DNA of 64,000 nt from Macrostomum hystrix (taxonomy: Eukaryota > Animalia > Platyhelminthes): the NCBI GenBank assembly GCA_950097015.1, contig CATNEN010000032.1, forward strand, positions 2,356,001 to 2,420,000. Reading direction: 5' to 3'. Shown here piece by piece: positions 37,346 through 52,162 of the stretch. The notes under the pieces were generated by a model, which saw nothing but the letters and a program-made list of their open reading frames with translations, made no database searches and was not told the origin of the DNA. Position 1 is the stretch's first letter, and each line of letters opens with the position of its first letter. A program made the translations under genes and the position numbers.

Positions 37346-38002
37346 ATGTGACCCTTCCATTCTAAAAGTTCGTCTTAAACAACTTTCCTTTGTAAATAGC
37401 CTTACAGATGCAATATATCACAAAGCAGTTTTCTCATCTCATCTCTATGAAGGGCATCAAATAATCGTATTGCCTGTGGCATATATGAGGCAAGTCTAAA
37501 GGATGTACATTTTCTCTTCATATCTAATTTTGTTATACTCCTATATACAAGTATTTAATCACTCCGTTTTTTATTTTTCATTGCACAAACAATGATTAGA
37601 TTATCAATAAGCACCCTTTCAAGCAGGCGTGGACTACAACATACACCTACTGATTTGCACGGTTCGGATTCATCACAAAAATTCTTAATCTAATTTAATT
37701 TCATAAAACTATGTATAATTCTACTGCCATTCTTCACGCTGTTATCAGTCGTGCTCGCGCTATACTACTTGCGTGTCGATAAGCATATTTAACGAGCACA
37801 TGTGTTTTATCTTAGATTTTTGTTTCAATTCTTTAATGTAAAGGTTAATTTATTGCATTGATTCGAAATTCGAGTTGTTCTATATAGGTAAATAAAAGTC
37901 GCAATGCTCCGCGTTTTAAGACCGTAGAGTTTTATGCGATAATTATGCAATGTTTCGAACGTGCCTCAGTAACAAATTCAACCTAATTTTTTGTCGCTTT
38001 CT

Positions 38003-39420
38003 TATATTCCGTGGGATTTCCATTACAGAATCAACCCTTCATTCCGTGGGATTTCCCTTCCAGAAACAACCCCTCATTCCGTGGGATTTCCATTACAGAA
38101 TCAACCCTTCATTCCGTGGGATTTCTATTACAGAATCAACCCTTCATTCCGTGGGATTTCCCTTCCAGAAACAACCCCTCATTCCGTGGGATTTCCATTA
38201 CAGAATCAACCCTTCATTCCGTGGGATTTCCATTACAGAATCAACCCTTCATTCCGTGGGATTTCCCTTCCAGAAACAACCCCTCATTCCGTGGGATTTC
38301 CATTACAGAATCAACCCTTCATTCCGTGGGATTTCTATTACAGAATCAACCCTTCATTCCGTGGGATTTCCCTTCCAGAAACAACCCCTCATTCCGTGGG
38401 ATTTCCATTACAGAATCAACCCTTCATTCCGTGGGATTTCTATTACAGAATCAACCCTTCATTCCGTGGGATTTCTATTACAGAATCAACCCTTCATTCC
38501 GTGGGATTTCCCTTCCAGAAGCAACCCCTCATTCCGTGGGATTTCCATTACAGAATCAACCCTTCATTCCGTGGGATTTCCCTTCCAGAAAAAACCCCTC
38601 ATTCCGTGGGATTTCCATTACAGAATCAACCCTTCATTCCATGGGATTTCCCTTCCAGAAGCAACCCCTCATTCCGTGGGATTTCCATTACAGAATCAAC
38701 CCTTCATTCCATGGGATTTCCCTTCCAGAAACAACCCCTCATTCCGTGGGATTTCCATTGCAGAATCAACCCCTCATTCCGTGGGGTTTCCCTTTGCCAG
38801 GGGTTAGCGATATGGGCGGCATCAGCCGCCTCCTCGCTGCGTCCGTCATGGAGGCTCCCTGCCGCTAAGTCAAGTAAGGGGTTTTTCCAGAAACAACCCC
38901 TCATTCCGTGGGATTTCCATTGCAGAATCAACCCTTCATTCCGTGGGATTTCCCTTCCAGAAACAACCCCTCATTCCGTGGGATTTCCATTGCAGAATCA
39001 ACCCTTCATTCCGTGGGATTTCCCTTCCAGAAACAACCCCTCATTCCGTGGGATTTCCATTGCAGAAACAACCCCTTATTCCGTGGGATTTCCATTACAG
39101 AATCAACCCTTCATTCCATGTGATTTCCCTTCCAGAAATAACCCCTCATTCCGTGGGATTTCCATTACAGAATCAACCCTTCATTCCATGGGATTTCCCT
39201 TCCAGAAACAACCCCTCATTCCGTGGGATTCCCATTACAGAATCAACCCTTCATTCCATGGGATTTCCCTTCCAGAAATAACCCCTCATTCCGTGGGATT
39301 TCCATTACAGAATCAACCCTTCATTCCATGGGATTTCCCTTCCAGAAACAACCCCTCATTCCGTGGGATTCCCATTACAGAATCAACCCTTCATTCCATG
39401 GGATTTCCCTTCCAGAAAAA
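38003..39420. repeat. array of two alternating 35-bp units (ATTCCGTGGGATTTCC core), interrupted at about 38790-38885
   Basis: Direct tandem repeat; related copies at 42160-42680. Confidence 0.95.
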
Positions 39421-39581
39421 AACTCCTTTTTAGCTGGGTTTCTCTACAGAAACAGCACATTATTTTGTTTTACATTACACTACTTGCAGTAGAAAAAAAC
39501 ATTTTTTTACTCCTAAGTAGCTTTTATAAGAAAAAATGATTTCACATTCTTCAGCTAGAGCGGGAGATTAACTGACCACCG

Positions 39582-41064
39582 ATGCGTCCCTCCGGCTGTT
39601 TCCTGCTTGTGCTTGGCGCTGTCCTGTGCGCCCTGGTTGCCATCCTGTTGCCAAGCAGCGGTTCCCTGACTGGCGCCAGTTTAAGTCGTCGATTTCTGCC
39701 GATATATTTGAAAATTCATCGCCAAGTAGGCGCATTATTATCGCCAGATTTTCGGCCGCGTTGACAACAACGACAAGGGCAAATCTACAGCGGAGAGCAA
39801 GTGCTTGTACTTTCTGTTCGAAGATCACCAGTTGCAGAAGAACAAGCACCTGTCTATTTTGGGCACCGTGTTCGATGTAAGCGAGTCCAGCTTCTACCAG
39901 GTTGGCGGTGACTACGAGCAGTTCACTGGCAGGGATGCGTCTAGGAATTTCGCCACCGGCGATACTGGCGTCCAGAGTAAGAGCTTCTCGGACAGTCTGG
40001 ATGGCTTGGGCGGCGCTCAGCTGGCCGACGTGTTCGAGTGGCAGAGGTTTGTTTCACTCCCAACGGAGCAAAATTAACTACCATCTGATTGGTCGAATCA
40101 GTCAAAACCCCAGCTATTCTCTGATTGGTCGAAGCAGTCAAACCCCAGCTATTATCTGATTGGTAAAATCAGTCAAACCCCACCTTATCTTTGATTGGTC
40201 AAATCAGTCAAACCCCAGCTATTCTCTGATTGGTCGAAGCAGTCAAACCCCAGCTATTCTCTGATTGGTCAAATCAGTCAAACCCCAGCTATTCTCTGAT
40301 TGGTCGAAGCAGTTAAACCCCAGCTATTCTCTGATTTGTCGAATCAGTCAAACCCCAGCTATTCTCTGATTTGTCGAAGCAGTTAAACCCCACCTTATCT
40401 TTGATTGGTCGAATCAGTCAAACCACACCTCATCTTTGATTGGTCAAATCAGTCAAACCCCACCTTATCTTTGATTGGTCAAATCAGTCAAACCCCAGCT
40501 ATTCTCTGATTGGTAAAATCAGTCAAACCCCACCTTATCTTTGATTGATCAAATCAGTCAAACCCCTGCTATTCTCTGATTGGTCAAATCAGTCAAACTT
40601 CAGCTATTCTCTGATTGGTTGAAGCAGTCAAACCCCAGTTACTCTACTACAATAATTTCAGATTCTACTTCGACAAGTACCGCTGCGTCGGCTACACGCG
40701 CGGCCGTTTCTACCTGCCCTCCCTGTTAGAGACCAATTATCTCCGGGGCCTTCGCGCTGCAGCCGAAGCCCACGCTGCTCACAAATCCCAGCTAGCCGAT
40801 GAATTCCCACCCTGCGGCGCCACTGCGGTTGACGGAAAAACGATTGTCTACTGCAATGGCGCGCTGGGATTAGATCCGAAGAATATTATGCCGTCAACTC
40901 GGTATCCGAGAATCTTCTACAACAAACTCGAGTCCACCGCCGGCTGTGCCTGCGTGCTGAGAGACATGCTGTCAGATGGAAGGGTGGCCGTGTACGAGGG
41001 CTGCTCGCCTGATGCCCTGCAGTGCACCGTGCACAGGGCCGCTCCACCCCAGCCGACTGATTAG
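39582..41064 (+). CDS. CYB5D2: neuferricin (cytochrome b5 heme/steroid-binding MAPR protein); exons 39582-about 39725, about 39832-40046, 40662-41064
   Basis: N-terminal hydrophobic anchor; LSILGTVFDVS...GGDYEQFTGRDASRNFATGD; C-terminal FPPC...C...CAC...YEGC...C pattern typical of neuferricin. First intron boundaries are ambiguous. Confidence 0.85.
40085..40640. repeat. about 36-bp intronic minisatellite (CTGATTGGTCGAATCAGTCAAACCCCAGCTATTCT)
   Basis: Fills intron 40047-40661. Confidence 0.93.
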
Positions 41065-41139
41065 CCAATCACTGGCGAGTGATGCCGAATGTCAGTTCAT
41101 TGGCTTAGTGGTCACAGACATGTTCAATTTAACTCTATT

Positions 41140-41465
41140 ACTCTCCCATCTATTCCTCTCCCATCTATTCCTCTCCCATCTATTCCTCTCCCATCTATTC
41201 CTCTCCCATCTATTCCTCTCCCATCTATTCCTCTCCCATCTATTCCTCTCCCATCTATTCCTCTCCCATTTGTTCTTTTCCTATCTGTTCCTCTCCCATC
41301 CGTTCATATCCCATCTATTCCTTTCCCATCTATTCCTCTCCCACCTATTCCTCTCCCACCTATTCCTCTCCCACCTATTCCTCTCCCACCTATTCCTCTC
41401 CTAACTATTCCTCTCCCATCTACTCCTCTCCCATCTATTCCTCTCCTATCTATGCCTCTCTTTCC
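41140..41465. repeat. 15-bp pyrimidine-rich repeat (CTATTCCTCTCCCAT)n
   Basis: Direct tandem repeat. Confidence 0.93.
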
Positions 41466-42159
41466 CATTCCATTGGCATGACTCTAACGTCTTAACTCAT
41501 TGCTCAATCGTTCTACTAAATCGAAAGAGTAATTTTAAAACAAGTTTACAGTTTTCAGAGTGAATAAATTTCTGTTAACTAAGAGTATATTTTCCCGCTA
41601 GAGACAAGGCTCATGACCATGTACTATTGGTGTAGAGCTGTTTTGTTGACATTTCTATTTTAGTTTGAATTAAGAGTGTAAATGTATCATCGCTTTAAAT
41701 GTACTATTATTTATGGCCGCGTGCAATTTGAGTTTTCTGTTCGCGCTAATGAATCAGGATTATCGATTTACATAGGCAATCAATTATCCCAAATCATGAG
41801 CCTGTTTCAGCTGAATCGATAAAAAACTTTTTAATTCAACGATTTGGTGCTTTGTTGTTTTACTGCCAATGCTTTACTAATACATCCATTCAGTTTGAAC
41901 ATTCCATTTGGATTCCGTCTTTTTGTGCCACCCTTATAACTGTTGATTGTGTCCTATTGTCTTGCTTTATTTGACGCAATACAGGGCACTAGAAAAATAA
42001 AACTGATTAGCTTGTTTGTTTTCAAGAGTTCAAACCACTCCGGGGATTTTCTCAGGACTTCTATTCTAGAGAACTGCTTCAATCCTCAGCAATTTTTTTT
42101 CGTAGAAAAAAACATTTTTAGATTATTTTCTGTTAGAAAATTTTTGTCGTTTCTTTTTG

Positions 42160-42345
42160 TTGGGATTTCCCTTCCAGAAATAACCTTTTATTCTGTGGGA
42201 TTTCCCCGACAGAAATAACCTTTTATTCTGTGGGATTTCCCCGACAGAAATAACCTTTTATTCTGTGGGATTTCCCCGACAGAAATAACCTTTTATTCTG
42301 TGGGATTTCTCCGACAGAAATAACCCCTTATTCCGTGGGATTTCC
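42160..42345. repeat. 35-bp repeat related to the 38-39 kb array
   Basis: GTGGGATTTCCCCGACAGAAATAACCTTTTATTCT units share GTGGGATTTCC..CAGAAA.AACC. Confidence 0.85.
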
Positions 42346-42728
42346 TCCTAGGACATTTCTTACTTTTCCTTTTGATTCCAATTTCGTGAAAAGCTCCCTG
42401 TTTCACGGATTTTCCATTCCAAAAAATAACTTACTTCTCTTTGGGATTTTCGATCCAGAAGTGGCCACTAAATATTTAACTTACCATTTCCTTTTCGTTA
42501 AAAAAAGCGAAGTTCATTCATATCTGGCTCATTTTTGGGATTTCCTTTCCAGAAATAGTTATTCCGTGCGGTTTCCATTTCAGAAAAGACTCACTGTAGT
42601 TATGGATTCCCCCAGATGGAAGTTAATTTCTTTAGGATTTTCCTTCCAGAAATAACTTCCATTTCATTGTTCCCTGGGATTCACGTTTTCCAAAGTGGCT
42701 AATAAAGCTACCCTGTCATCTCCCGCAG

Positions 42729-45612
42729 ACGCAGAGCATTGTGGTGCAGGTTGGCCAGTGCGGCAACCAAATCGGATCCAGATTCTGGGATCTGGCGTTG
42801 CGGGAGCACGCCGCCGTCAGCAAGCGCGGCGACTTCGATGACTCTCTTGGCACTTTCTTTCGTCAACAACCCGGCGAAGGTCTGGTGAGTTTTGGTTGTG
42901 TGTCAAGGTGATTAGGTGATGACTGTGGGTCAAGGTGAGTAGGTAATGACTGTGGGTCAAGGTGAGTAGGTGGTGACTGTGGGTCAAGGTGAGTAGGTGA
43001 TGACTGTGGGTCAAGGTGAGTAGGTGGTGACTGTGGGTCAAGGTGAGTAGGTGATGACTGTGGGTCAAGGTGAGTAGGTGATGACTGTGGGTCAAGGTGA
43101 GTAGGTGATGACTGTGGGTCAAGGTGAGTAGGTGATGACTGTGGGTCAAGGTGAGTAGGTGATGACTGTGGGTCAAGGTGAGTAGGTGATGACTGTGGGT
43201 CAAGGTGAGTAGGTGGTGACTGTGGGTCAAGGTGAGTAGGTGATGACTGTGGGTCAAGGTGAGTAGGTGGTGACTGTGGGTCAAGGTGAGTAGGTGATGA
43301 CTGTGGGTCAAGGTGAGTAGGTGATGACTGTGGGTCAAGGTGAGTAGGTGATGACTGTGGGTCAAGGTGAGTAGGTGATGACTGTGGGTCAAGGTGAGTA
43401 GGTGGTGACTGATAAGTCCATGCGTACAGGTAACATGTTGAGCACTTTAAGAATTCCATTCTTCCCCCCACAGGGGTTGAAAGCTCGCGCTGTTCTGGTC
43501 GACATGGAAGAAGGCGTCGTTGGCGAACTATTGAAAGGCCGTCTGCGCAGCGTATTCGATCATTCCGCCCTCATCACGGACGTGTCGGGCTCCGGCAACA
43601 ACTGGGCCGTCGGGCACTGCGAGTACGGCGCCAGGCACCGGGAGGCCCTGACGGAGGCGGTGCGCAAATGCGCCGAACAATGCGACTGTCTGCAGTGCTT
43701 CTTCCTTCTGCACTCCATGGGTGGCGGCACTGGTTCCGGCCTGGGCACCGCTATTCTCACCCTGCTGCGCGACCAGTACCCCGAGGTCTACAGGTTGGTT
43801 GCCATAGCAACACATGCTGCTGTCACACTACTTAACCCGAAGCAGTAGCATGGAAGCTAGAATTGAAAATTGTGAACAAAATACCAGCCGGCCACAACCA
43901 TTACAGATTCGTCACAGCGGTTTACCCATCGGAGGATGATGACGTCATCACCAGCCCCTACAACAGCGTGCTGGCAATGCGCTGCCTAACGGAGCACGCC
44001 GACTGCGTTATGCCCATAGACAATGCCTGCCTGAGCGGCATTGCGCAACGCGTGCAGGACAATCGGCCGACCGGACAAAAGGATAGCGCAGCCACGGTTG
44101 GTGAACAGAACTAGTGCCAGATATTGCTGCTAGATCTAGTAGCTAGACATTGCTGTTAGATCTAGTAGCTAGACATTGCTGTTAGATCTAGTAGCTAGAC
44201 ATTGCTGTTAGATCTAGTAGCTAGACATTGCTGTTAGATCTAGTAGCTAGACATTGCTGTTAGATCTAGTAGCTAGACATTGCTGTTAGATCTAGTAGCT
44301 AGACATTTTGGTTAGATCTAGCAGCTAGATATTGCTGTTAGATCTAGGGGCTAGAAATTTTGGTTAGATCTAGGGGCTAGACATTTTGGTTAGATCTAAT
44401 GGCTAGACATTTTGGTTAGATCTAATGGCTAGACATTTTGGTTAGATCTAATGGCTAGACATTTTGGTTAGATCTAATGGCTAGACATTGTATTCCACTC
44501 ACGTGTTTTACCTTGAGTGAGGATCCACCTTAACTTTAGCTGTTTAATCAAGTGACTCAATCCCTGCTGCTGATAATGGTTTCCGTCAGCAGAAGGACGC
44601 CAAGCCGTTCGACTCAATGAACAGCATCGTGGCCAACCTGCTGCTGAACCTGACCGCCTCCTCCCGGTTCTCGGGCACGCTGAATGTCGATCTGAACGAG
44701 ATTAGCATGAACCTGGTGCCGTTTCCAAGGCTTCACTACCTGCTGGCGGCGCAGAGTCCGCTGTCGCCCGCCCTGCCGCCCAGGCGACCAGACCAGGCAT
44801 TCAGCGAGTCCTTCAGCCGCGAGGCGCAGCTGTTCTCAGCCGAGCCCAGAGCTCACCTGTACCTGGCCTGCGCCCTGCTGCTGCGAGGTCGCATCGATCT
44901 CAGCGACATCCGACGCAGCGTGGACCGGCTGGGCAATAAGCTGGCGTTCGCCGATTGGAATCCGGACTGCTGGAAGATCGGCCACTGCGCTGTGCCGCCA
45001 GCCGGACAGCAGTTCGCTTTGCTCAACCTGGCCAACAATACAGCCGTCGGGGCCAGCATGCAGCTGCTCGGCGACCGCTTCGGCCGGCTGTATAAACGGC
45101 GCGCCCACCTGCACCACTACACCCAGGTGAGGACATTGTCGGACATTCCGACCCCTCTGGACACTTCCTATTGTATTGAGCACACTGAACATCCTGAACT
45201 TCCCGAACGTACTGAACTTCCCGAACGTACTGAACTTCCCGAACGTACTGAACTTCCCGAACGTACTGAACTTCCCGAACGTACTGAACTTCCCGAACGT
45301 ACTGAACTTCCCGAACGTACTGAACTTCCCGAACGTACTGAACTTCCCGAACGTACTGAACTTCCCGACTGAACTTCCCGAACGTACTGAACTTCCTGAA
45401 CATCTTGAATATCCTGAACTTCTGAACATCTTGAATATCCTGAACTTCCTGAACATCTCAATTGACAGGTTGACGGCTTTGAAGCATCAGCCTTCGACCT
45501 CGCCTTCGCCTCGCTGAATGACCTGCGCGAGGACTACGCGGCGTTGGAGCGGCGCCACGCGGCCGGGGCCTCGGCTGAGCCGCCTCTGCCGCGACTAAAG
45601 ATTGCGTCCTGA
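42729..45612 (+). CDS. TUBE1: epsilon-tubulin; exons 42729-42884, 43474-43793, 43907-44096, 44590-45126, 45469-45612; initiator ATG absent from the first visible exon
   Basis: TQSIVVQVGQCGNQIG..FWDLALREHAAV, LKARAVLVDMEEGVV, GSGNNWAVGH, HSMGGGTGSGLG, DDVITSPYNS, AHLHHY and C-terminal LPRLKIAS all match TUBE1; consistent splice phases. Confidence 0.95.
42900..43412. repeat. 27-bp intronic minisatellite (GGTGATGACTGTGGGTCAAGGTGAGTA)n
   Basis: About 18 units in TUBE1 intron 1. Confidence 0.96.
44110..44490. repeat. 26-bp intronic minisatellite (CTAGACATTGCTGTTAGATCTAGTAG)n
   Basis: TUBE1 intron 3. Confidence 0.94.
45185..45460. repeat. 18-bp intronic minisatellite (CCGAACGTACTGAACTTC)n
   Basis: TUBE1 intron 4. 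Confidence 0.94.
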
Positions 45613-46127
45613 AGCCGAACCTGAAGTCCTGAACCTCCTGAACCTGCTTTCTTACTGCATCATTGTGCTTTTGTTCCGTCCAAATTATTACTGTCCTCTC
45701 TTTTATCTATTCGCAAATTTTGTATCCATGTTATTTTGCTAATTTTTGCACAAAGGTTACAATGTCAATGAAAAATAAAGCGGATGAATTTTGCTGTTTA
45801 TAAATAGCATTTGGCATTTTCCAAGTTTTAGCACAAAACGCATAGTTAATTTATGCTGTTTTAACAATGACCTACGATTGCTACATACAAATGGGCCAAT
45901 CGATTTCAATTCTCATATGAAACTAAAACTCATGGACCAAATTTTTGCATATACTGGTTAATAGATTACAGTAACTTCGTCATGTGATCCTAGGTTGAGT
46001 TGGCGCTGGAATAATGTGGATTGGATGGACCCGGAACGGAGCTCTGTCATTGGCTGGAACTTTGTCACGTGATCGTCTAGGTGGGCTAATCGCTGAAGTT
46101 ATTGACCTGATGATCGGGAAGACCGCT

Positions 46128-47282: not shown

Positions 47283-47956
47283 CTACTGGGCGTCCTGACT
47301 TTGCTCATGCGACTGGCGTCAGCTGGGGCGAGACTGCAGGCGGTAGTAAAACTTTTATGGCTTGATCTATATGTAAAATTTGAAGCCTTCGGGGGGTCAG
47401 TTAAAGATTGTGTAAAATTGTTATAATTTCATTTCTTGGCAAAAAAATATACCTCTGCTTTGAATCAGATGTTTAACTTTGCACAGCCTGATTATGATGT
47501 ACAACTACAAGTATATAAACCTTGTTTTTATGTACATTGTCTTTATTCACTTTATTTTTTTAGACGCCAGACAACTCCGCTTACACTGCCTTCCAATTAT
47601 TAGAAATTATAATTTGCCATTTTTTACACAACACAAGTAAAGTGTTACGAGTAGTTCTAGCTCGTATCTTGACTAGTGTTTGATATGGCCATTAAGTGCC
47701 TTGAATAAAAATCCGATCGATAATGCTAGCGTAGCCGCCACCTCTTTTCTTCGTCTTATCTTACCAGGCCTTCACTCATCAACCCACTCTCAGCCAGCCA
47801 ATGAGAGGCGAGCACAAACCCCCGGCCTACCCCACCCCACCCCACCCCATACCCCGCCTGACCATCTAAAATAATTTCATCTACATGACAGTCAGTCAGC
47901 TCACCAAAGTCGGAGCCCTGATGACCTGAGTCAAAGTTCCAAGCCAAAGTTTTACT

Positions 47957-48835
47957 ATGGACTCCACACCGACCTCTCCGTACGCTTCGACACCAGTGCA
48001 GCAGCAGCAGCAGCAGCAGCAATCTCGGCCGCGACGTCGCAGCTCGTTCGTGCGCTGCTACAACTGCGACCAGTGGTTCAGCTGCGCCCAGCACTTGATG
48101 CAGCACAAAACTGCGGAGCACCCGATGGCTGAAGCCGTACGCAAGATGGGCCTGAAAATTGTCAAAGACAGAGAGTCTGGCAGCACGGCGGCGATAATTC
48201 CAGACACAGAAGCTCACACTGACTCTGCGTCTGTAGCTCCTCTGCATCATCAGCATCAGCAACCTCAGCACTCCAGGCAGCCTGTTCCAGATCTGCAGGA
48301 GACAGAAGAGCTGCTTGACAGGCTCAAACTGCTGTCAGTTGGACAGCGCACCAAACGACGCCAAAGTCGGCAGTTCCAGCAGCAGCCGCAGCAACAGGAA
48401 CCATCGCCGCATTGTAGACAACGGCGTAGAATAACGCTAGACTCTCCTGACACAGCTACAGCAGCAGCTGCCGCAGCTGCCGCTGCTGCCGTCGCCGCCG
48501 AGGCTGCCGCCTGTCAGCTGCCCGCCTTCGCCTGCCAGTGCGGCGCTCTTCTACCAGACCTGCCGCTAGTGAAGCAGCTGCACATGCGAACCAATCACGA
48601 GTCACCGGTGGCCTCCCTGCAGCAGCAGCAGCAGCAGTTCCAGCAGCCTCCAGCCATGTTCAGCATGGTCCAGCTCAGCCCCTGCTCTCCATGCTACTCG
48701 ATGCACCATCATCCATCTTCAATCTTCCTGCCGGCCATGGCTTATCAGCAGCAGCCGCCACCGCAGCAGTCAGCCACTCCCAGCTCCCACCTGATTGGCT
48801 ACGCATTTCAGCCGCCGCTGCCCCAGCTGCAATAA
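47957..48835 (+). CDS. single-exon C2H2 zinc-finger protein with poly-Q/poly-A tracts (292 aa)
   Basis: CYNCDQWFSCAQHLMQHKTAEH (C-x2-C-x12-H-x4-H) and atypical CQCGALLPDLPLVKQLHMRTNH. Confidence 0.75.
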   Translation: MDSTPTSPYASTPVQQQQQQQQSRPRRRSSFVRCYNCDQWFSCAQHLMQHKTAEHPMAEAVRKMGLKIVKDRESGSTAAIIPDTEAHTDSASVAPLHHQHQQPQHSRQPVPDLQETEELLDRLKLLSVGQRTKRRQSRQFQQQPQQQEPSPHCRQRRRITLDSPDTATAAAAAAAAAAVAAEAAACQLPAFACQCGALLPDLPLVKQLHMRTNHESPVASLQQQQQQFQQPPAMFSMVQLSPCSPCYSMHHHPSSIFLPAMAYQQQPPPQQSATPSSHLIGYAFQPPLPQLQ

Positions 48836-50289: not shown

Positions 50290-50985
50290 GGACAGACAGA
50301 ACAGACAGGAAAGACAGAAAAGAGTGGAAAGACAGTCACCCAGAAAAGACAAGATAGACAGTTACCCAGGACAAACAGAAAAGGCAAAGACACAGGACAG
50401 ACCAAAAGGACAGACTCCCAGAAAAGATAGAGCAGAAAGAACAGACAGGACAGACAGACAGGATAGACAGACAGGATAGACAACAGACAGACAGGACAGA
50501 CAGACAGGACAGACAGACAGGATAGACAACAGACAGACAGGACAGACAGACAGGATAGACAACAGACAGACAGGATAGACAACAGACAGACAGGATAGAC
50601 AACAGACAGACAGGATAGACAAAAGACAGACAGGATAGACAACAGACAGACAGGACAAACAGACAGGATAGACAGAACAGACAGACAGAACAGACAGGAC
50701 AGACAGACAGGATAGACAACAGACAGACAGGACAGACAGAACAGACAGACAGGACAGACAGACAGGATAGACAGAACAGACAGACAGGATAGACAGAACA
50801 GACAGACAGGATAGACAGGACAGACAGAACAGACAGGACAGACAGAACAGACAGGCAGGACAGACAGAACAGACGACAGGACAGACAGACAGGATAGACA
50901 GAACAGACAGACAGGATAGACAGGACAGACAGAACAGACAGGACAGACATAACGAACAGGACAGAAAGACACCCAGGACAGACAG
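50290..50985. repeat. (GACA/GGACAGA)-rich degenerate microsatellite directly upstream of the GPCR ATG
   Basis: Seen directly. Confidence 0.9.
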
Positions 50986-50992
50986 GACTCCG

Positions 50993-52162
50993 ATGTCCCC
51001 ATCGAGCTACACCGTGACGCTGGGCCTGACAGCGGGACTGGCGCTTCTGTCAGCCGTGCTCAACTCTGCTCTGTTGCGCGCCCTGCTCCGCTCCCGGCCG
51101 CGCCAGCGCACCTCGGGGATGCTGGCGCTCAGCTGCCTGGAGGTCGCACTCAGCCTGCTGCTGGCCAGCGCCATGCTGTGGCACGCCGAGGCGCCGCTGC
51201 CACTGCTGGACTCGGCGCACTCGCTGCAGATGACCCGCAACCACTGGCTGGTGGCGCTGGGCTCGATCCGGCTGGCCGCGCTGATCCGACCGCGTGGAAC
51301 CGCCGCGGCCGCCGCCACAGCAGCCGCCGCCGGCCGGGGTCGCTTCGGCAGGGCCCGCCAGCTGGCCCTGCTGGCCTGCCTCGGCGTTCTCTCCGGTGTA
51401 ACCCTGTTCGCTGTCGCGGTCGGATTCGAAGATCGAAGCTTCGCTGACGACGGCTCCGTCGCCACGGTCGCTGGTCCAGGTGGCAACTTGTCCAAATCGT
51501 TCGAAAAGCTCCTGGAGGATGCTTTCAACTTGACCGAGTTTCAGCGCCGCGCCAGAAGCATGCTGTTGAAGTACTCGGTGTTCTCGGCCGTCGGCGTTCT
51601 CGCTCCCGGCATCGCTGTAACTGGCATCACCGTCAAGACCGTCCACATCCTGCAGGCCGGACAGCTGCTGCACCCGGCGACCCGCCGGACCACCAAGGCC
51701 GTCGCCCTGCTCTGCGCCGCCTTCGTTGCCTGCCAGTTCCCGCTGGCCGCAGCCTACGTTGCCACCGCCGCCCACCTGTTGAGCCTGAGCGCTGCCTCCG
51801 CTGAGCACGTGGCCTCTGTGGTTGAGCTGCTCGAGTCCGTGAGCAGTTGGAGTCTGGCTCTGGTGCCCGCCGACTCCTGCCTGACGTTCCTCATCCTGGC
51901 CCGCTACAGCCGACACTTTCGCGCCCTCCTGCTTGGCAGATGCTGCTGCTGCGGCTGCTGCTGCTGCTGCTGCAACCCTCCATTGCCCTCTGGCGCTGAT
52001 GAGAACCCGGACGACGGTGAACACAGCCGTCGATTTCGACGACATGGTCGCAACAATCAGAACGAGAATGCCGACATGATGGCGATGTATCAGCTGACGA
52101 GCGCCAACCAGGTCACCGCCGGGGTCTCCTCGTCTGCGGAGCCGGAGCACGAGAACGGCTGA
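50993..52162 (+). CDS. intronless divergent class A (rhodopsin-like) GPCR, 389 aa
   Basis: About seven hydrophobic segments; TM1 VLNS, TM3 LGSIRLAALIRP (DRY-equivalent), TM6 FVACQFP, TM7/H8 DSCLTFLILARYSRHFR; Cys-rich tail; AATAAA at 52224. Confidence 0.8.
   Translation: MSPSSYTVTLGLTAGLALLSAVLNSALLRALLRSRPRQRTSGMLALSCLEVALSLLLASAMLWHAEAPLPLLDSAHSLQMTRNHWLVALGSIRLAALIRPRGTAAAAATAAAAGRGRFGRARQLALLACLGVLSGVTLFAVAVGFEDRSFADDGSVATVAGPGGNLSKSFEKLLEDAFNLTEFQRRARSMLLKYSVFSAVGVLAPGIAVTGITVKTVHILQAGQLLHPATRRTTKAVALLCAAFVACQFPLAAAYVATAAHLLSLSAASAEHVASVVELLESVSSWSLALVPADSCLTFLILARYSRHFRALLLGRCCCCGCCCCCCNPPLPSGADENPDDGEHSRRFRRHGRNNQNENADMMAMYQLTSANQVTAGVSSSAEPEHENG

What the first reader, a model, noticed from the sequence alone, without database searches (positions are those of the whole stretch)
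42690..42760. Epsilon-tubulin has no visible genomic start codon; the Met may come from the spliced leader's terminal AUG
Seen: the conserved N-terminus (M)TQSIVVQVGQC starts exactly at acceptor TCCCGCAG|ACG (42729). The frame is closed by TAG at 42633 with no ATG in between, and I found no ATG|GT mini-exon between the neuferricin stop (41064) and this site. Known: flatworm spliced leaders end in AUG, which can act as the initiator Met (shown in Schistosoma). SL-AUG plus ACG CAG AGC would rebuild the MTQS start of TUBE1 precisely. Inference: translation of this centriole gene depends on trans-splicing.
Basis: partly seen in the sequence, partly recalled or inferred. Interest (0 to 1): 0.78.

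Follow-up and report, generated by a model that had tools for sequence, protein, structure and literature searches.

The report
Spliced leader supplies epsilon-tubulin start codon
In this Macrostomum flatworm the epsilon-tubulin gene has no start codon of its own, and RNA data show a trans-spliced leader ending in AUG joined exactly in front of its second codon: a confirmed new example of a mechanism already known from schistosomes.

Summary
A five-exon epsilon-tubulin gene (42729-45612, + strand) begins with codon ACG (Thr2) directly after the acceptor TCCCGCAG. The frame is closed by TAG at 42633, with no in-frame ATG between. No ATG|GT mini-exon lies between 41064 and 42729.

In three runs of one study, spliced contigs carry ACTGCGAAGACTCAATTTATTGCAT before window base 42728 (G). 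Together these are the last 26 nt of the published 35-nt Macrostomum lignano spliced leader, which ends in ATG. The mRNA therefore reads ...TTGCATG|ACG CAG AGC = M-T-Q-S. No contig covers 41939-42727, and the 64-kb window holds no leader-like sequence.

- 54 of 66 full-length orthologues start MTQS[V/I].
- The first internal Met (residue 64) lies behind the nucleotide-binding GQCGNQIG loop.
- Three M. lignano copies have the same acceptor|ACG and are filed in GenBank as 'partial', starting at TQS.
- Schistosoma and Clonorchis keep a genomic ATG.

Use of the leader AUG by ribosomes is inferred, not shown. The mechanism has been known since Cheng et al. 2006. This scan already confirmed it for CHMP6 on another piece of this genome (s1-408126). 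Verdict: real, ordinary in kind, a new member.

The parts
41926..42728 (+). Outron or intergenic stretch between the last RNA contig of the upstream Cyt-b5 (neuferricin-like) gene and the trans-splice acceptor. It is rich in a degenerate 35-bp repeat (42161-42345 and further copies).
   Evidence: Contig depth is zero at 41939-42646. Depth in bin 42647-42823 is exactly what cover from 42728 onward gives.
42633..42635 (+). In-frame TAG that closes the epsilon-tubulin frame upstream. No ATG follows it before 42729.
   Evidence: translation; one search list of ATGs.
42717..42728 (+). Trans-splice acceptor CATCTCCCGCAG. The AG is at 42727-42728.
   Evidence: Leader letters lie immediately before 42728 in three runs. 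The TCCCGCAG|ACG motif is identical in three M. lignano loci.
42729..42884 (+). Exon 1, 52 codons, starting at Thr2 (TQSIVVQVGQCGNQIG...). It has no Met codon.
   Evidence: Pfam Tubulin E 4.4e-08.
43474..43793 (+). Exon 2 (tubulin GTPase domain, GGGTGSG loop).
   Evidence: GT..AG joint 42884/43474 in three runs. Pfam Tubulin E 2e-26.
43907..44096 (+). Exon 3.
   Evidence: GT..AG joints. Pfam Tubulin E 6.2e-07.
44590..45126 (+). Exon 4 (Tubulin_C domain). An alternative acceptor 3 nt further on (44593) is used in two runs.
   Evidence: joints. Pfam Tubulin_C E 1.9e-18. 55-64% identity to named epsilon-tubulins.
45469..45612 (+). Exon 5, coding part, with stop TGA at 45610-45612. The 3' UTR continues to at least 45815.

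Best explanation
The gene is the epsilon-tubulin (TUBE1) orthologue of a Macrostomum flatworm. Its pre-mRNA has no initiator codon. The spliceosome joins the 35-nt spliced leader, donated by a separate SL RNA and ending in AUG, to the acceptor CAG at 42726-42728. The mature mRNA then reads ...UUGCAUG|ACG CAG AGC. The leader's terminal AUG is the only AUG upstream of residue 64 and lies in frame directly before Thr2, so it serves as the start codon and restores the conserved MTQSIVVQVGQCGNQIG N-terminus. Shown: the gene model, the missing genomic ATG, the leader-exon junction in RNA, the same acceptor in M. lignano, and a genomic ATG in trematodes. Inferred: that ribosomes initiate at the leader AUG, and that full-length protein therefore requires trans-splicing.
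For: -: contigs of 1576, 1363 and 1360 nt from runs X3, X4 and X5 carry 25 loose letters ACTGCGAAGACTCAATTTATTGCAT before 42728 (G). They then follow all five exons through GT..AG joints. No contig covers 41939-42727. A fourth run, from another study (X1), also starts cover at 42728.
- (PMC8629364): the M. lignano leader is CGGTCTCTTACTGCGAAGACTCAATTTATTGCATG. Its last 26 nt equal the loose letters plus G.
- there is no in-frame ATG after TAG 42633 and no ATG|GT upstream. The CDS is 448 codons plus stop, and the first internal Met is at residue 64.
- no leader-like sequence in the window at up to 3 mismatches.
- the best matches are named epsilon-tubulins, and 54 of 66 full-length ones start MTQS[V/I].
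- three M. lignano copies (PAA76190.1, PAA74932.1/PAA74933.1) are filed 'partial', start at TQS, and have the identical TCCCGCAG|ACGCAGAGC.
- Cheng et al. 2006, as cited, report that more than 40 S. mansoni cDNAs need the leader AUG.
Against: - There are no protein or ribosome-footprint data, so use of the leader AUG is inferred.
- The junction evidence comes from assembled contigs, not raw reads. It comes from one study (three samples). The second study's contig only begins 2 letters before 42728.
- Only 26 of the 35 leader letters are seen, as expected where a de Bruijn contig stops at the part shared by all trans-spliced mRNAs.
- The runs are not on record as RNA. Their RNA nature is deduced from the removed introns.
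- M. lignano has an in-frame outron ATG 15 nt upstream (ATG CAA ATC CCG CAG), so in that species an unspliced mRNA could in principle start elsewhere.
Confidence: 0.88

Rival explanations
1. An upstream cis-spliced exon that ends in ATG, missed by eye or lying far upstream, supplies the Met. On this reading the leader-like letters belong to that exon.
For: In principle a mini-exon could hide in the 1.6 kb between the two genes, or further upstream. Contigs can miss rare isoforms (caveats).
Against: - No + strand ATGGT lies between 41064 and 42729.
- No sequence within 3 mismatches of the 26 leader letters occurs anywhere in the 64-kb window.
- The letters are identical to the published SL RNA exon.
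- No contig covers 41939-42727 in four runs.
Confidence: 0.03
2. The leader is added, but translation does not start at its AUG. It starts at the first internal AUG (residue 64) or at a near-cognate codon, giving a shorter or different N-terminus.
For: The context of the leader AUG (U at -3, A at +4) is not a strong Kozak context (read from the sequence). No translation data exist.
Against: - A start at residue 64 would delete strand 1, the GQCGNQIG phosphate-binding loop and helix 1. Exon 1 conserves these at 96% identity to M. lignano and about 70% to a primate TUBE1.
- Exon 1 is under evident coding constraint.
- In schistosomes the leader AUG is reported to be used (Cheng 2006 as cited in PMC9851317).
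Confidence: 0.06
3. The leader-exon junction is an assembly artefact, or the genomic ATG was lost through a misassembly of the window.
For: The evidence is from de Bruijn contigs. The genome is very repeat-rich.
Against: - The same junction appears in three separately assembled runs. Any 31-mer across it must exist in reads.
- Three independent M. lignano loci from another assembly show the same acceptor|ACG with no ATG at that place.
Confidence: 0.02

Closest known systems
Schistosoma mansoni mRNAs that use the spliced leader's 3'-terminal AUG as initiator (Cheng, Cohen, Ndegwa, Davis 2006, J Biol Chem 281:733; cited in PMC9851317 and PMC12582326); 'slORFs'
   Same: The flatworm leader ends in AUG. 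It is joined at an AG acceptor directly in frame with an ORF that has no AUG of its own, and so rebuilds a conserved N-terminus.
   Different: This is a different flatworm order (free-living Macrostomorpha) and a different gene. Initiation at the leader AUG is not tested experimentally here. In the trematodes looked at, this same gene has its own genomic ATG.
CHMP6 of the same genome
   Same: Same genome, same leader, same arrangement: acceptor directly before codon 2, confirmed by RNA.
   Different: Another gene on another piece of the genome. There the point was completion of a myristoylation signal; here it is the tubulin N-terminus in front of the nucleotide-binding loop.
M. lignano epsilon-tubulin entries PAA76190.1 and PAA74932.1/PAA74933.1 (GenBank, 'hypothetical protein, partial')
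   Same: 92-96% protein identity in four exons and 82% in exon 3. The TCCCGCAG|ACGCAGAGC junction is identical, and the models start at TQS without Met.
   Different: The M. lignano loci have an in-frame ATG 15 nt inside the outron that the window lacks. Further upstream than about 60 nt the sequences do not align. Trans-splicing of those copies was not checked here.

Membership tests
mRNA that takes its initiator AUG from a flatworm spliced leader (slORF, Cheng et al. 2006) | The organism has a spliced leader whose last three bases are AUG. | tested here: met
   The loose letters ...TTGCAT plus G in three runs equal the published Macrostomum leader ending in ATG.
mRNA that takes its initiator AUG from a flatworm spliced leader (slORF, Cheng et al. 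2006) | [quoted passage not shown] | tested here: met
   The junction is at 42728/42729. No leader-like DNA lies in the 64-kb window.
mRNA that takes its initiator AUG from a flatworm spliced leader (slORF, Cheng et al. 2006) | The leader AUG is in frame with the ORF, and the mature mRNA has no other AUG that could give the full protein. | tested here: met
   ATG|ACG CAG AGC is in phase 0. The leader has no other ATG (read from the sequence). The first internal Met is at residue 64.
mRNA that takes its initiator AUG from a flatworm spliced leader (slORF, Cheng et al. 2006) | Ribosomes initiate at the leader AUG. | not testable with these tools
   This needs proteomics, ribosome profiling or a reporter assay.
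Epsilon-tubulin (TUBE1) | Tubulin GTPase domain followed by the tubulin C-terminal domain. | tested here: met
   PF00091 on exons 1-3 and PF03953 on exon 4.
Epsilon-tubulin (TUBE1) | Closer to epsilon-tubulins than to other tubulin classes. | tested here: met
   Of the listed relatives of exon 4 that carry a tubulin-class name, all are called tubulin epsilon, at 55-64% identity, E about 1e-60 to 1e-68. The best alpha, beta and Asgard tubulins in the PDB reach only E about 1e-27. A primate TUBE1 aligns to four of the five exons at 52-70%. No tree was built.
Epsilon-tubulin (TUBE1) | N-terminus MTQS[V/I]..QVGQCGNQ[I/V]G. | tested here: met
   54 of 66 full-length relatives start MTQSV or MTQSI. 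The window encodes TQSIVVQVGQCGNQIG, and the M is supplied by the leader.
Downstream gene of a flatworm operon resolved by trans-splicing | A same-strand upstream gene less than 1 kb away after subtracting repeats (criterion of PMC8629364), and a trans-spliced downstream gene. | tested here: inconclusive
   The upstream Cyt-b5 gene is on the + strand. Its RNA contigs end near 41925, about 800 nt before the acceptor, and part of that is repeat. No polycistronic RNA was seen, and contigs cannot show a 3' end.

The most novel reading that the evidence does not exclude
Loss of the genomic ATG of epsilon-tubulin, with the acceptor CAG sitting exactly in the codon slot of the ancestral ATG, is a fixed and genus-wide state in Macrostomum. 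It makes synthesis of a core centriole protein strictly conditional on SL trans-splicing. This couples centriole and cilium biogenesis to the trans-splicing and leader-cap-dependent translation programme, which in M. lignano is enriched in stem-cell genes.
Probability: 0.2. Interest if true: 0.5.

Novelty: new member of a known kind. Interest (0 to 1): 0.36.

Why it matters
The result gives a clean, RNA-backed case outside the parasitic flatworms in which a highly conserved essential gene cannot make its protein without trans-splicing. It explains why the M. lignano epsilon-tubulin entries in GenBank are flagged 'partial'. It also shows that gene callers must add the leader's ATG in Macrostomum genomes, or they will truncate or mis-start such genes. 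Comparison with Schistosoma and Clonorchis, which keep a genomic ATG, shows that the dependence arose within flatworms. The mechanism itself has been known since 2006.

Tried and rejected
- **Cis mini-exon.** I searched for ATG|GT on the + strand between the two genes and listed all ATGs there. None is a plausible donor.
- **Leader encoded in cis.** The 26-mer at up to 3 mismatches gives no match in the window. The 14-mer at 2 mismatches gives one match, at 37846, which is the chance expectation and ends in ATT, not ATG.
- **PDB by sequence.** Only alpha, beta and Asgard tubulins matched, with no epsilon structure, so this did not help class assignment.
- **A Logan RNA contig of an unnamed relative** (P0011, L006). 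It has an ordinary 5' UTR and its own ATG, so it gives no extension of the finding.
- **The 770-aa UniRef M. lignano model** (P0122). It does not contain the N-terminal QSIVV motif, so it was not used.
- **Left out under the operators' rule.** The joined spliced protein was not sent to any search, look-up or fold tool. Only exon-by-exon references were searched, plus one uninterrupted ORF reference with a region restriction. The joined CDS was built only inside a local script, to count codons and stops.

Full report
**Observation.** The + strand reads ...ctgtcatctcccgcag|ACGCAGAGCATTGTGGTGCAGGTTGGCCAGTGCGGCAAC. The AG is at 42727-42728 and the exon starts at 42729. Translated in that frame, the stretch gives ...S*FL*DFPSRNNFHFIVPWDSRFPKWLIKLPCHLPQ followed by TQSIVVQVGQCGNQIGSRFWDLALREH. 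The last stop is TAG at 42633-42635, and there is no Met codon between it and 42729. Between the stop of the upstream ORF (41064) and 42729 there are 15 ATGs on the + strand, none followed by GT.

**Gene model.** Spliced RNA contigs define five exons with GT..AG introns (splice sites printed):

| Exon | Coordinates |
|---|---|
| 1 | 42729-42884 |
| 2 | 43474-43793 |
| 3 | 43907-44096 |
| 4 | 44590-45126 |
| 5 | 45469-45612 |

Together they make 448 codons and a TGA with no internal stop. The first Met codon inside the frame is residue 64, counting Thr as 2. The 3' UTR runs to at least 45815.

**Identity.**
- Exon by exon, Pfam finds the tubulin GTPase domain on exons 1-3 and Tubulin_C on exon 4.
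- The word search with exon 4 returns proteins that sources call tubulin epsilon chain, from sponges to mammals, at 55-64% identity.
- The best solved alpha, beta and Asgard tubulins are far weaker.
- A primate TUBE1 aligns to four of the five exons at 52-70%.
- The nearest relative is M. lignano PAA76190.1, at 92-96% identity in four exons and 82% in exon 3.

The window therefore comes from a Macrostomum that is not the sequenced M. lignano copy.

**The RNA evidence.** The run search found four runs of one study (organism B) that hold half the sampled words of a 3-kb stretch, about its exonic share. It also found two runs of another study. I laid three of the first study and one of the second on 40700-46000.
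- Runs X3, X4 and X5 each give one contig (1576, 1363 and 1360 nt). Its first 25 letters, ACTGCGAAGACTCAATTTATTGCAT, lie on nothing in the stretch. Its 26th letter is window base 42728 (G). It then follows all five exons (tables 5, 7, 8).
- The published 35-nt M. lignano leader is CGGTCTCTTACTGCGAAGACTCAATTTATTGCATG (PMC8629364). The 25 loose letters plus G are its last 26 bases.
- The G at 42728 fits both the leader's last base and the acceptor's G. With the canonical cut the leader contributes ATG and the exon starts at ACG.
- Only 26 leader bases are seen. This is what a k-mer assembly gives where it meets sequence shared by thousands of mRNAs (inference).
- Depth is zero from 41939 to 42646. 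Depth in the bin 42647-42823 is exactly that of a contig starting at 42728, in all four runs (table 2).
- The contig of the second study (X1) starts two letters before 42728.
- The window holds nothing within three mismatches of the 26-mer, so the leader is not a cis exon here.

**Why the leader AUG is the likely start.**
- The leader has no other ATG (read).
- The mature mRNA has no further in-frame AUG until residue 64. A start there would remove the first strand, the GQCGNQIG loop and helix 1, which exon 1 conserves strongly.
- Of 66 relatives of at least 440 residues, 54 begin MTQSV or MTQSI. The leader AUG therefore restores the family's N-terminus to the residue.
- Flatworm leaders all end in ATG. 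In S. mansoni more than 40 cDNAs were reported to need it (Cheng et al. 2006, as summarised in PMC9851317 and PMC12582326).
- Initiation itself is not shown here.

**Comparison.**
- Three M. lignano loci (two GenBank gene models, both flagged 'partial' and starting TQS) have the identical TCCCGCAG|ACGCAGAGC.
- Only about 60 nt upstream align weakly; beyond that the sequences differ.
- M. lignano has an in-frame ATG 15 nt inside the outron (ATG CAA ATC CCG CAG). The window has CAT CTC CCG CAG there, so that ATG is not conserved.
- In Schistosoma spindalis and Clonorchis sinensis the gene has a genomic ATG directly before ACT/ACG CAG TC.
- An unnamed relative's RNA contig also has its own ATG and an ordinary 5' UTR.
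- In Macrostomum the acceptor CAG thus sits where other animals have ATG. The dependence on the leader arose within flatworms (inference).

**Context.** Its RNA contigs reach about 41925, some 800 nt before the acceptor. Part of that gap is a 35-bp repeat. By the published 1-kb repeat-adjusted rule the pair could be an operon, but no polycistronic RNA was seen, so this stays open.

**Limits.**
- The evidence comes from contigs, not raw reads. The runs are not on record as RNA; their intron-free contigs say they are.
- The clear junction comes from one study.
- Only a local frame count was made.

**Verdict.** This is a new, well-documented member of a known mechanism. The scan already confirmed the mechanism once on another piece of this genome (CHMP6, s1-408126), and first readers have flagged it for many other genes there.

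Noticed in passing
window 43474 versus 43484: The contig of the second study (X1, organism A) joins exon 1 to an AG 10 nt further into exon 2 (skips 599 instead of 589). That shifts the frame, so it is probably a minor unproductive isoform or a difference in that organism's copy.
   Followed up: no
window 44590 versus 44593: The start of exon 4 has a tandem CAG CAG acceptor. Two runs use 44590 and two use 44593, which adds or drops one Gln. The M. lignano protein aligns from 44593.
   Followed up: partly
window 37950-39540 and 42161-42660: The same roughly 35-bp repeat family (GGGATTTCC..CAGAAATAACC) fills long stretches upstream of the Cyt-b5 gene and the outron of the tubulin gene. Each unit ends in a CAG that looks like an acceptor, yet the leader goes only to 42728.
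   Followed up: no
window 42897-43411, 44107-44490, 45194-45454: Three of the four introns of the tubulin gene consist largely of tandem repeats with periods of 27, 26 and 18 bp. The 27-bp unit of intron 1 contains GGTGAGT donor-like sites in every copy.
   Followed up: no
L001 3985-4000, and L004 and L005 at 1485-1500: All three M. lignano epsilon-tubulin loci have an in-frame ATG 15 nt upstream of the acceptor (would read MQIPQ-TQS). It could serve an mRNA that is not trans-spliced. It is absent from the window.
   Followed up: partly
window 42818: C>T in the contigs of all four runs (GTC to GTT, synonymous). The sequenced RNA samples therefore differ slightly from the assembled individual.
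   Followed up: no
window 47930-48832 and 50771-52000: Two long + strand ORFs lie downstream. One is Gln- and Ala-rich with C2H2-like CxxC...HxxxH motifs. The other follows a long TDRQDRQ-type repeat and looks like a multi-pass membrane protein. Neither was examined.
   Followed up: no
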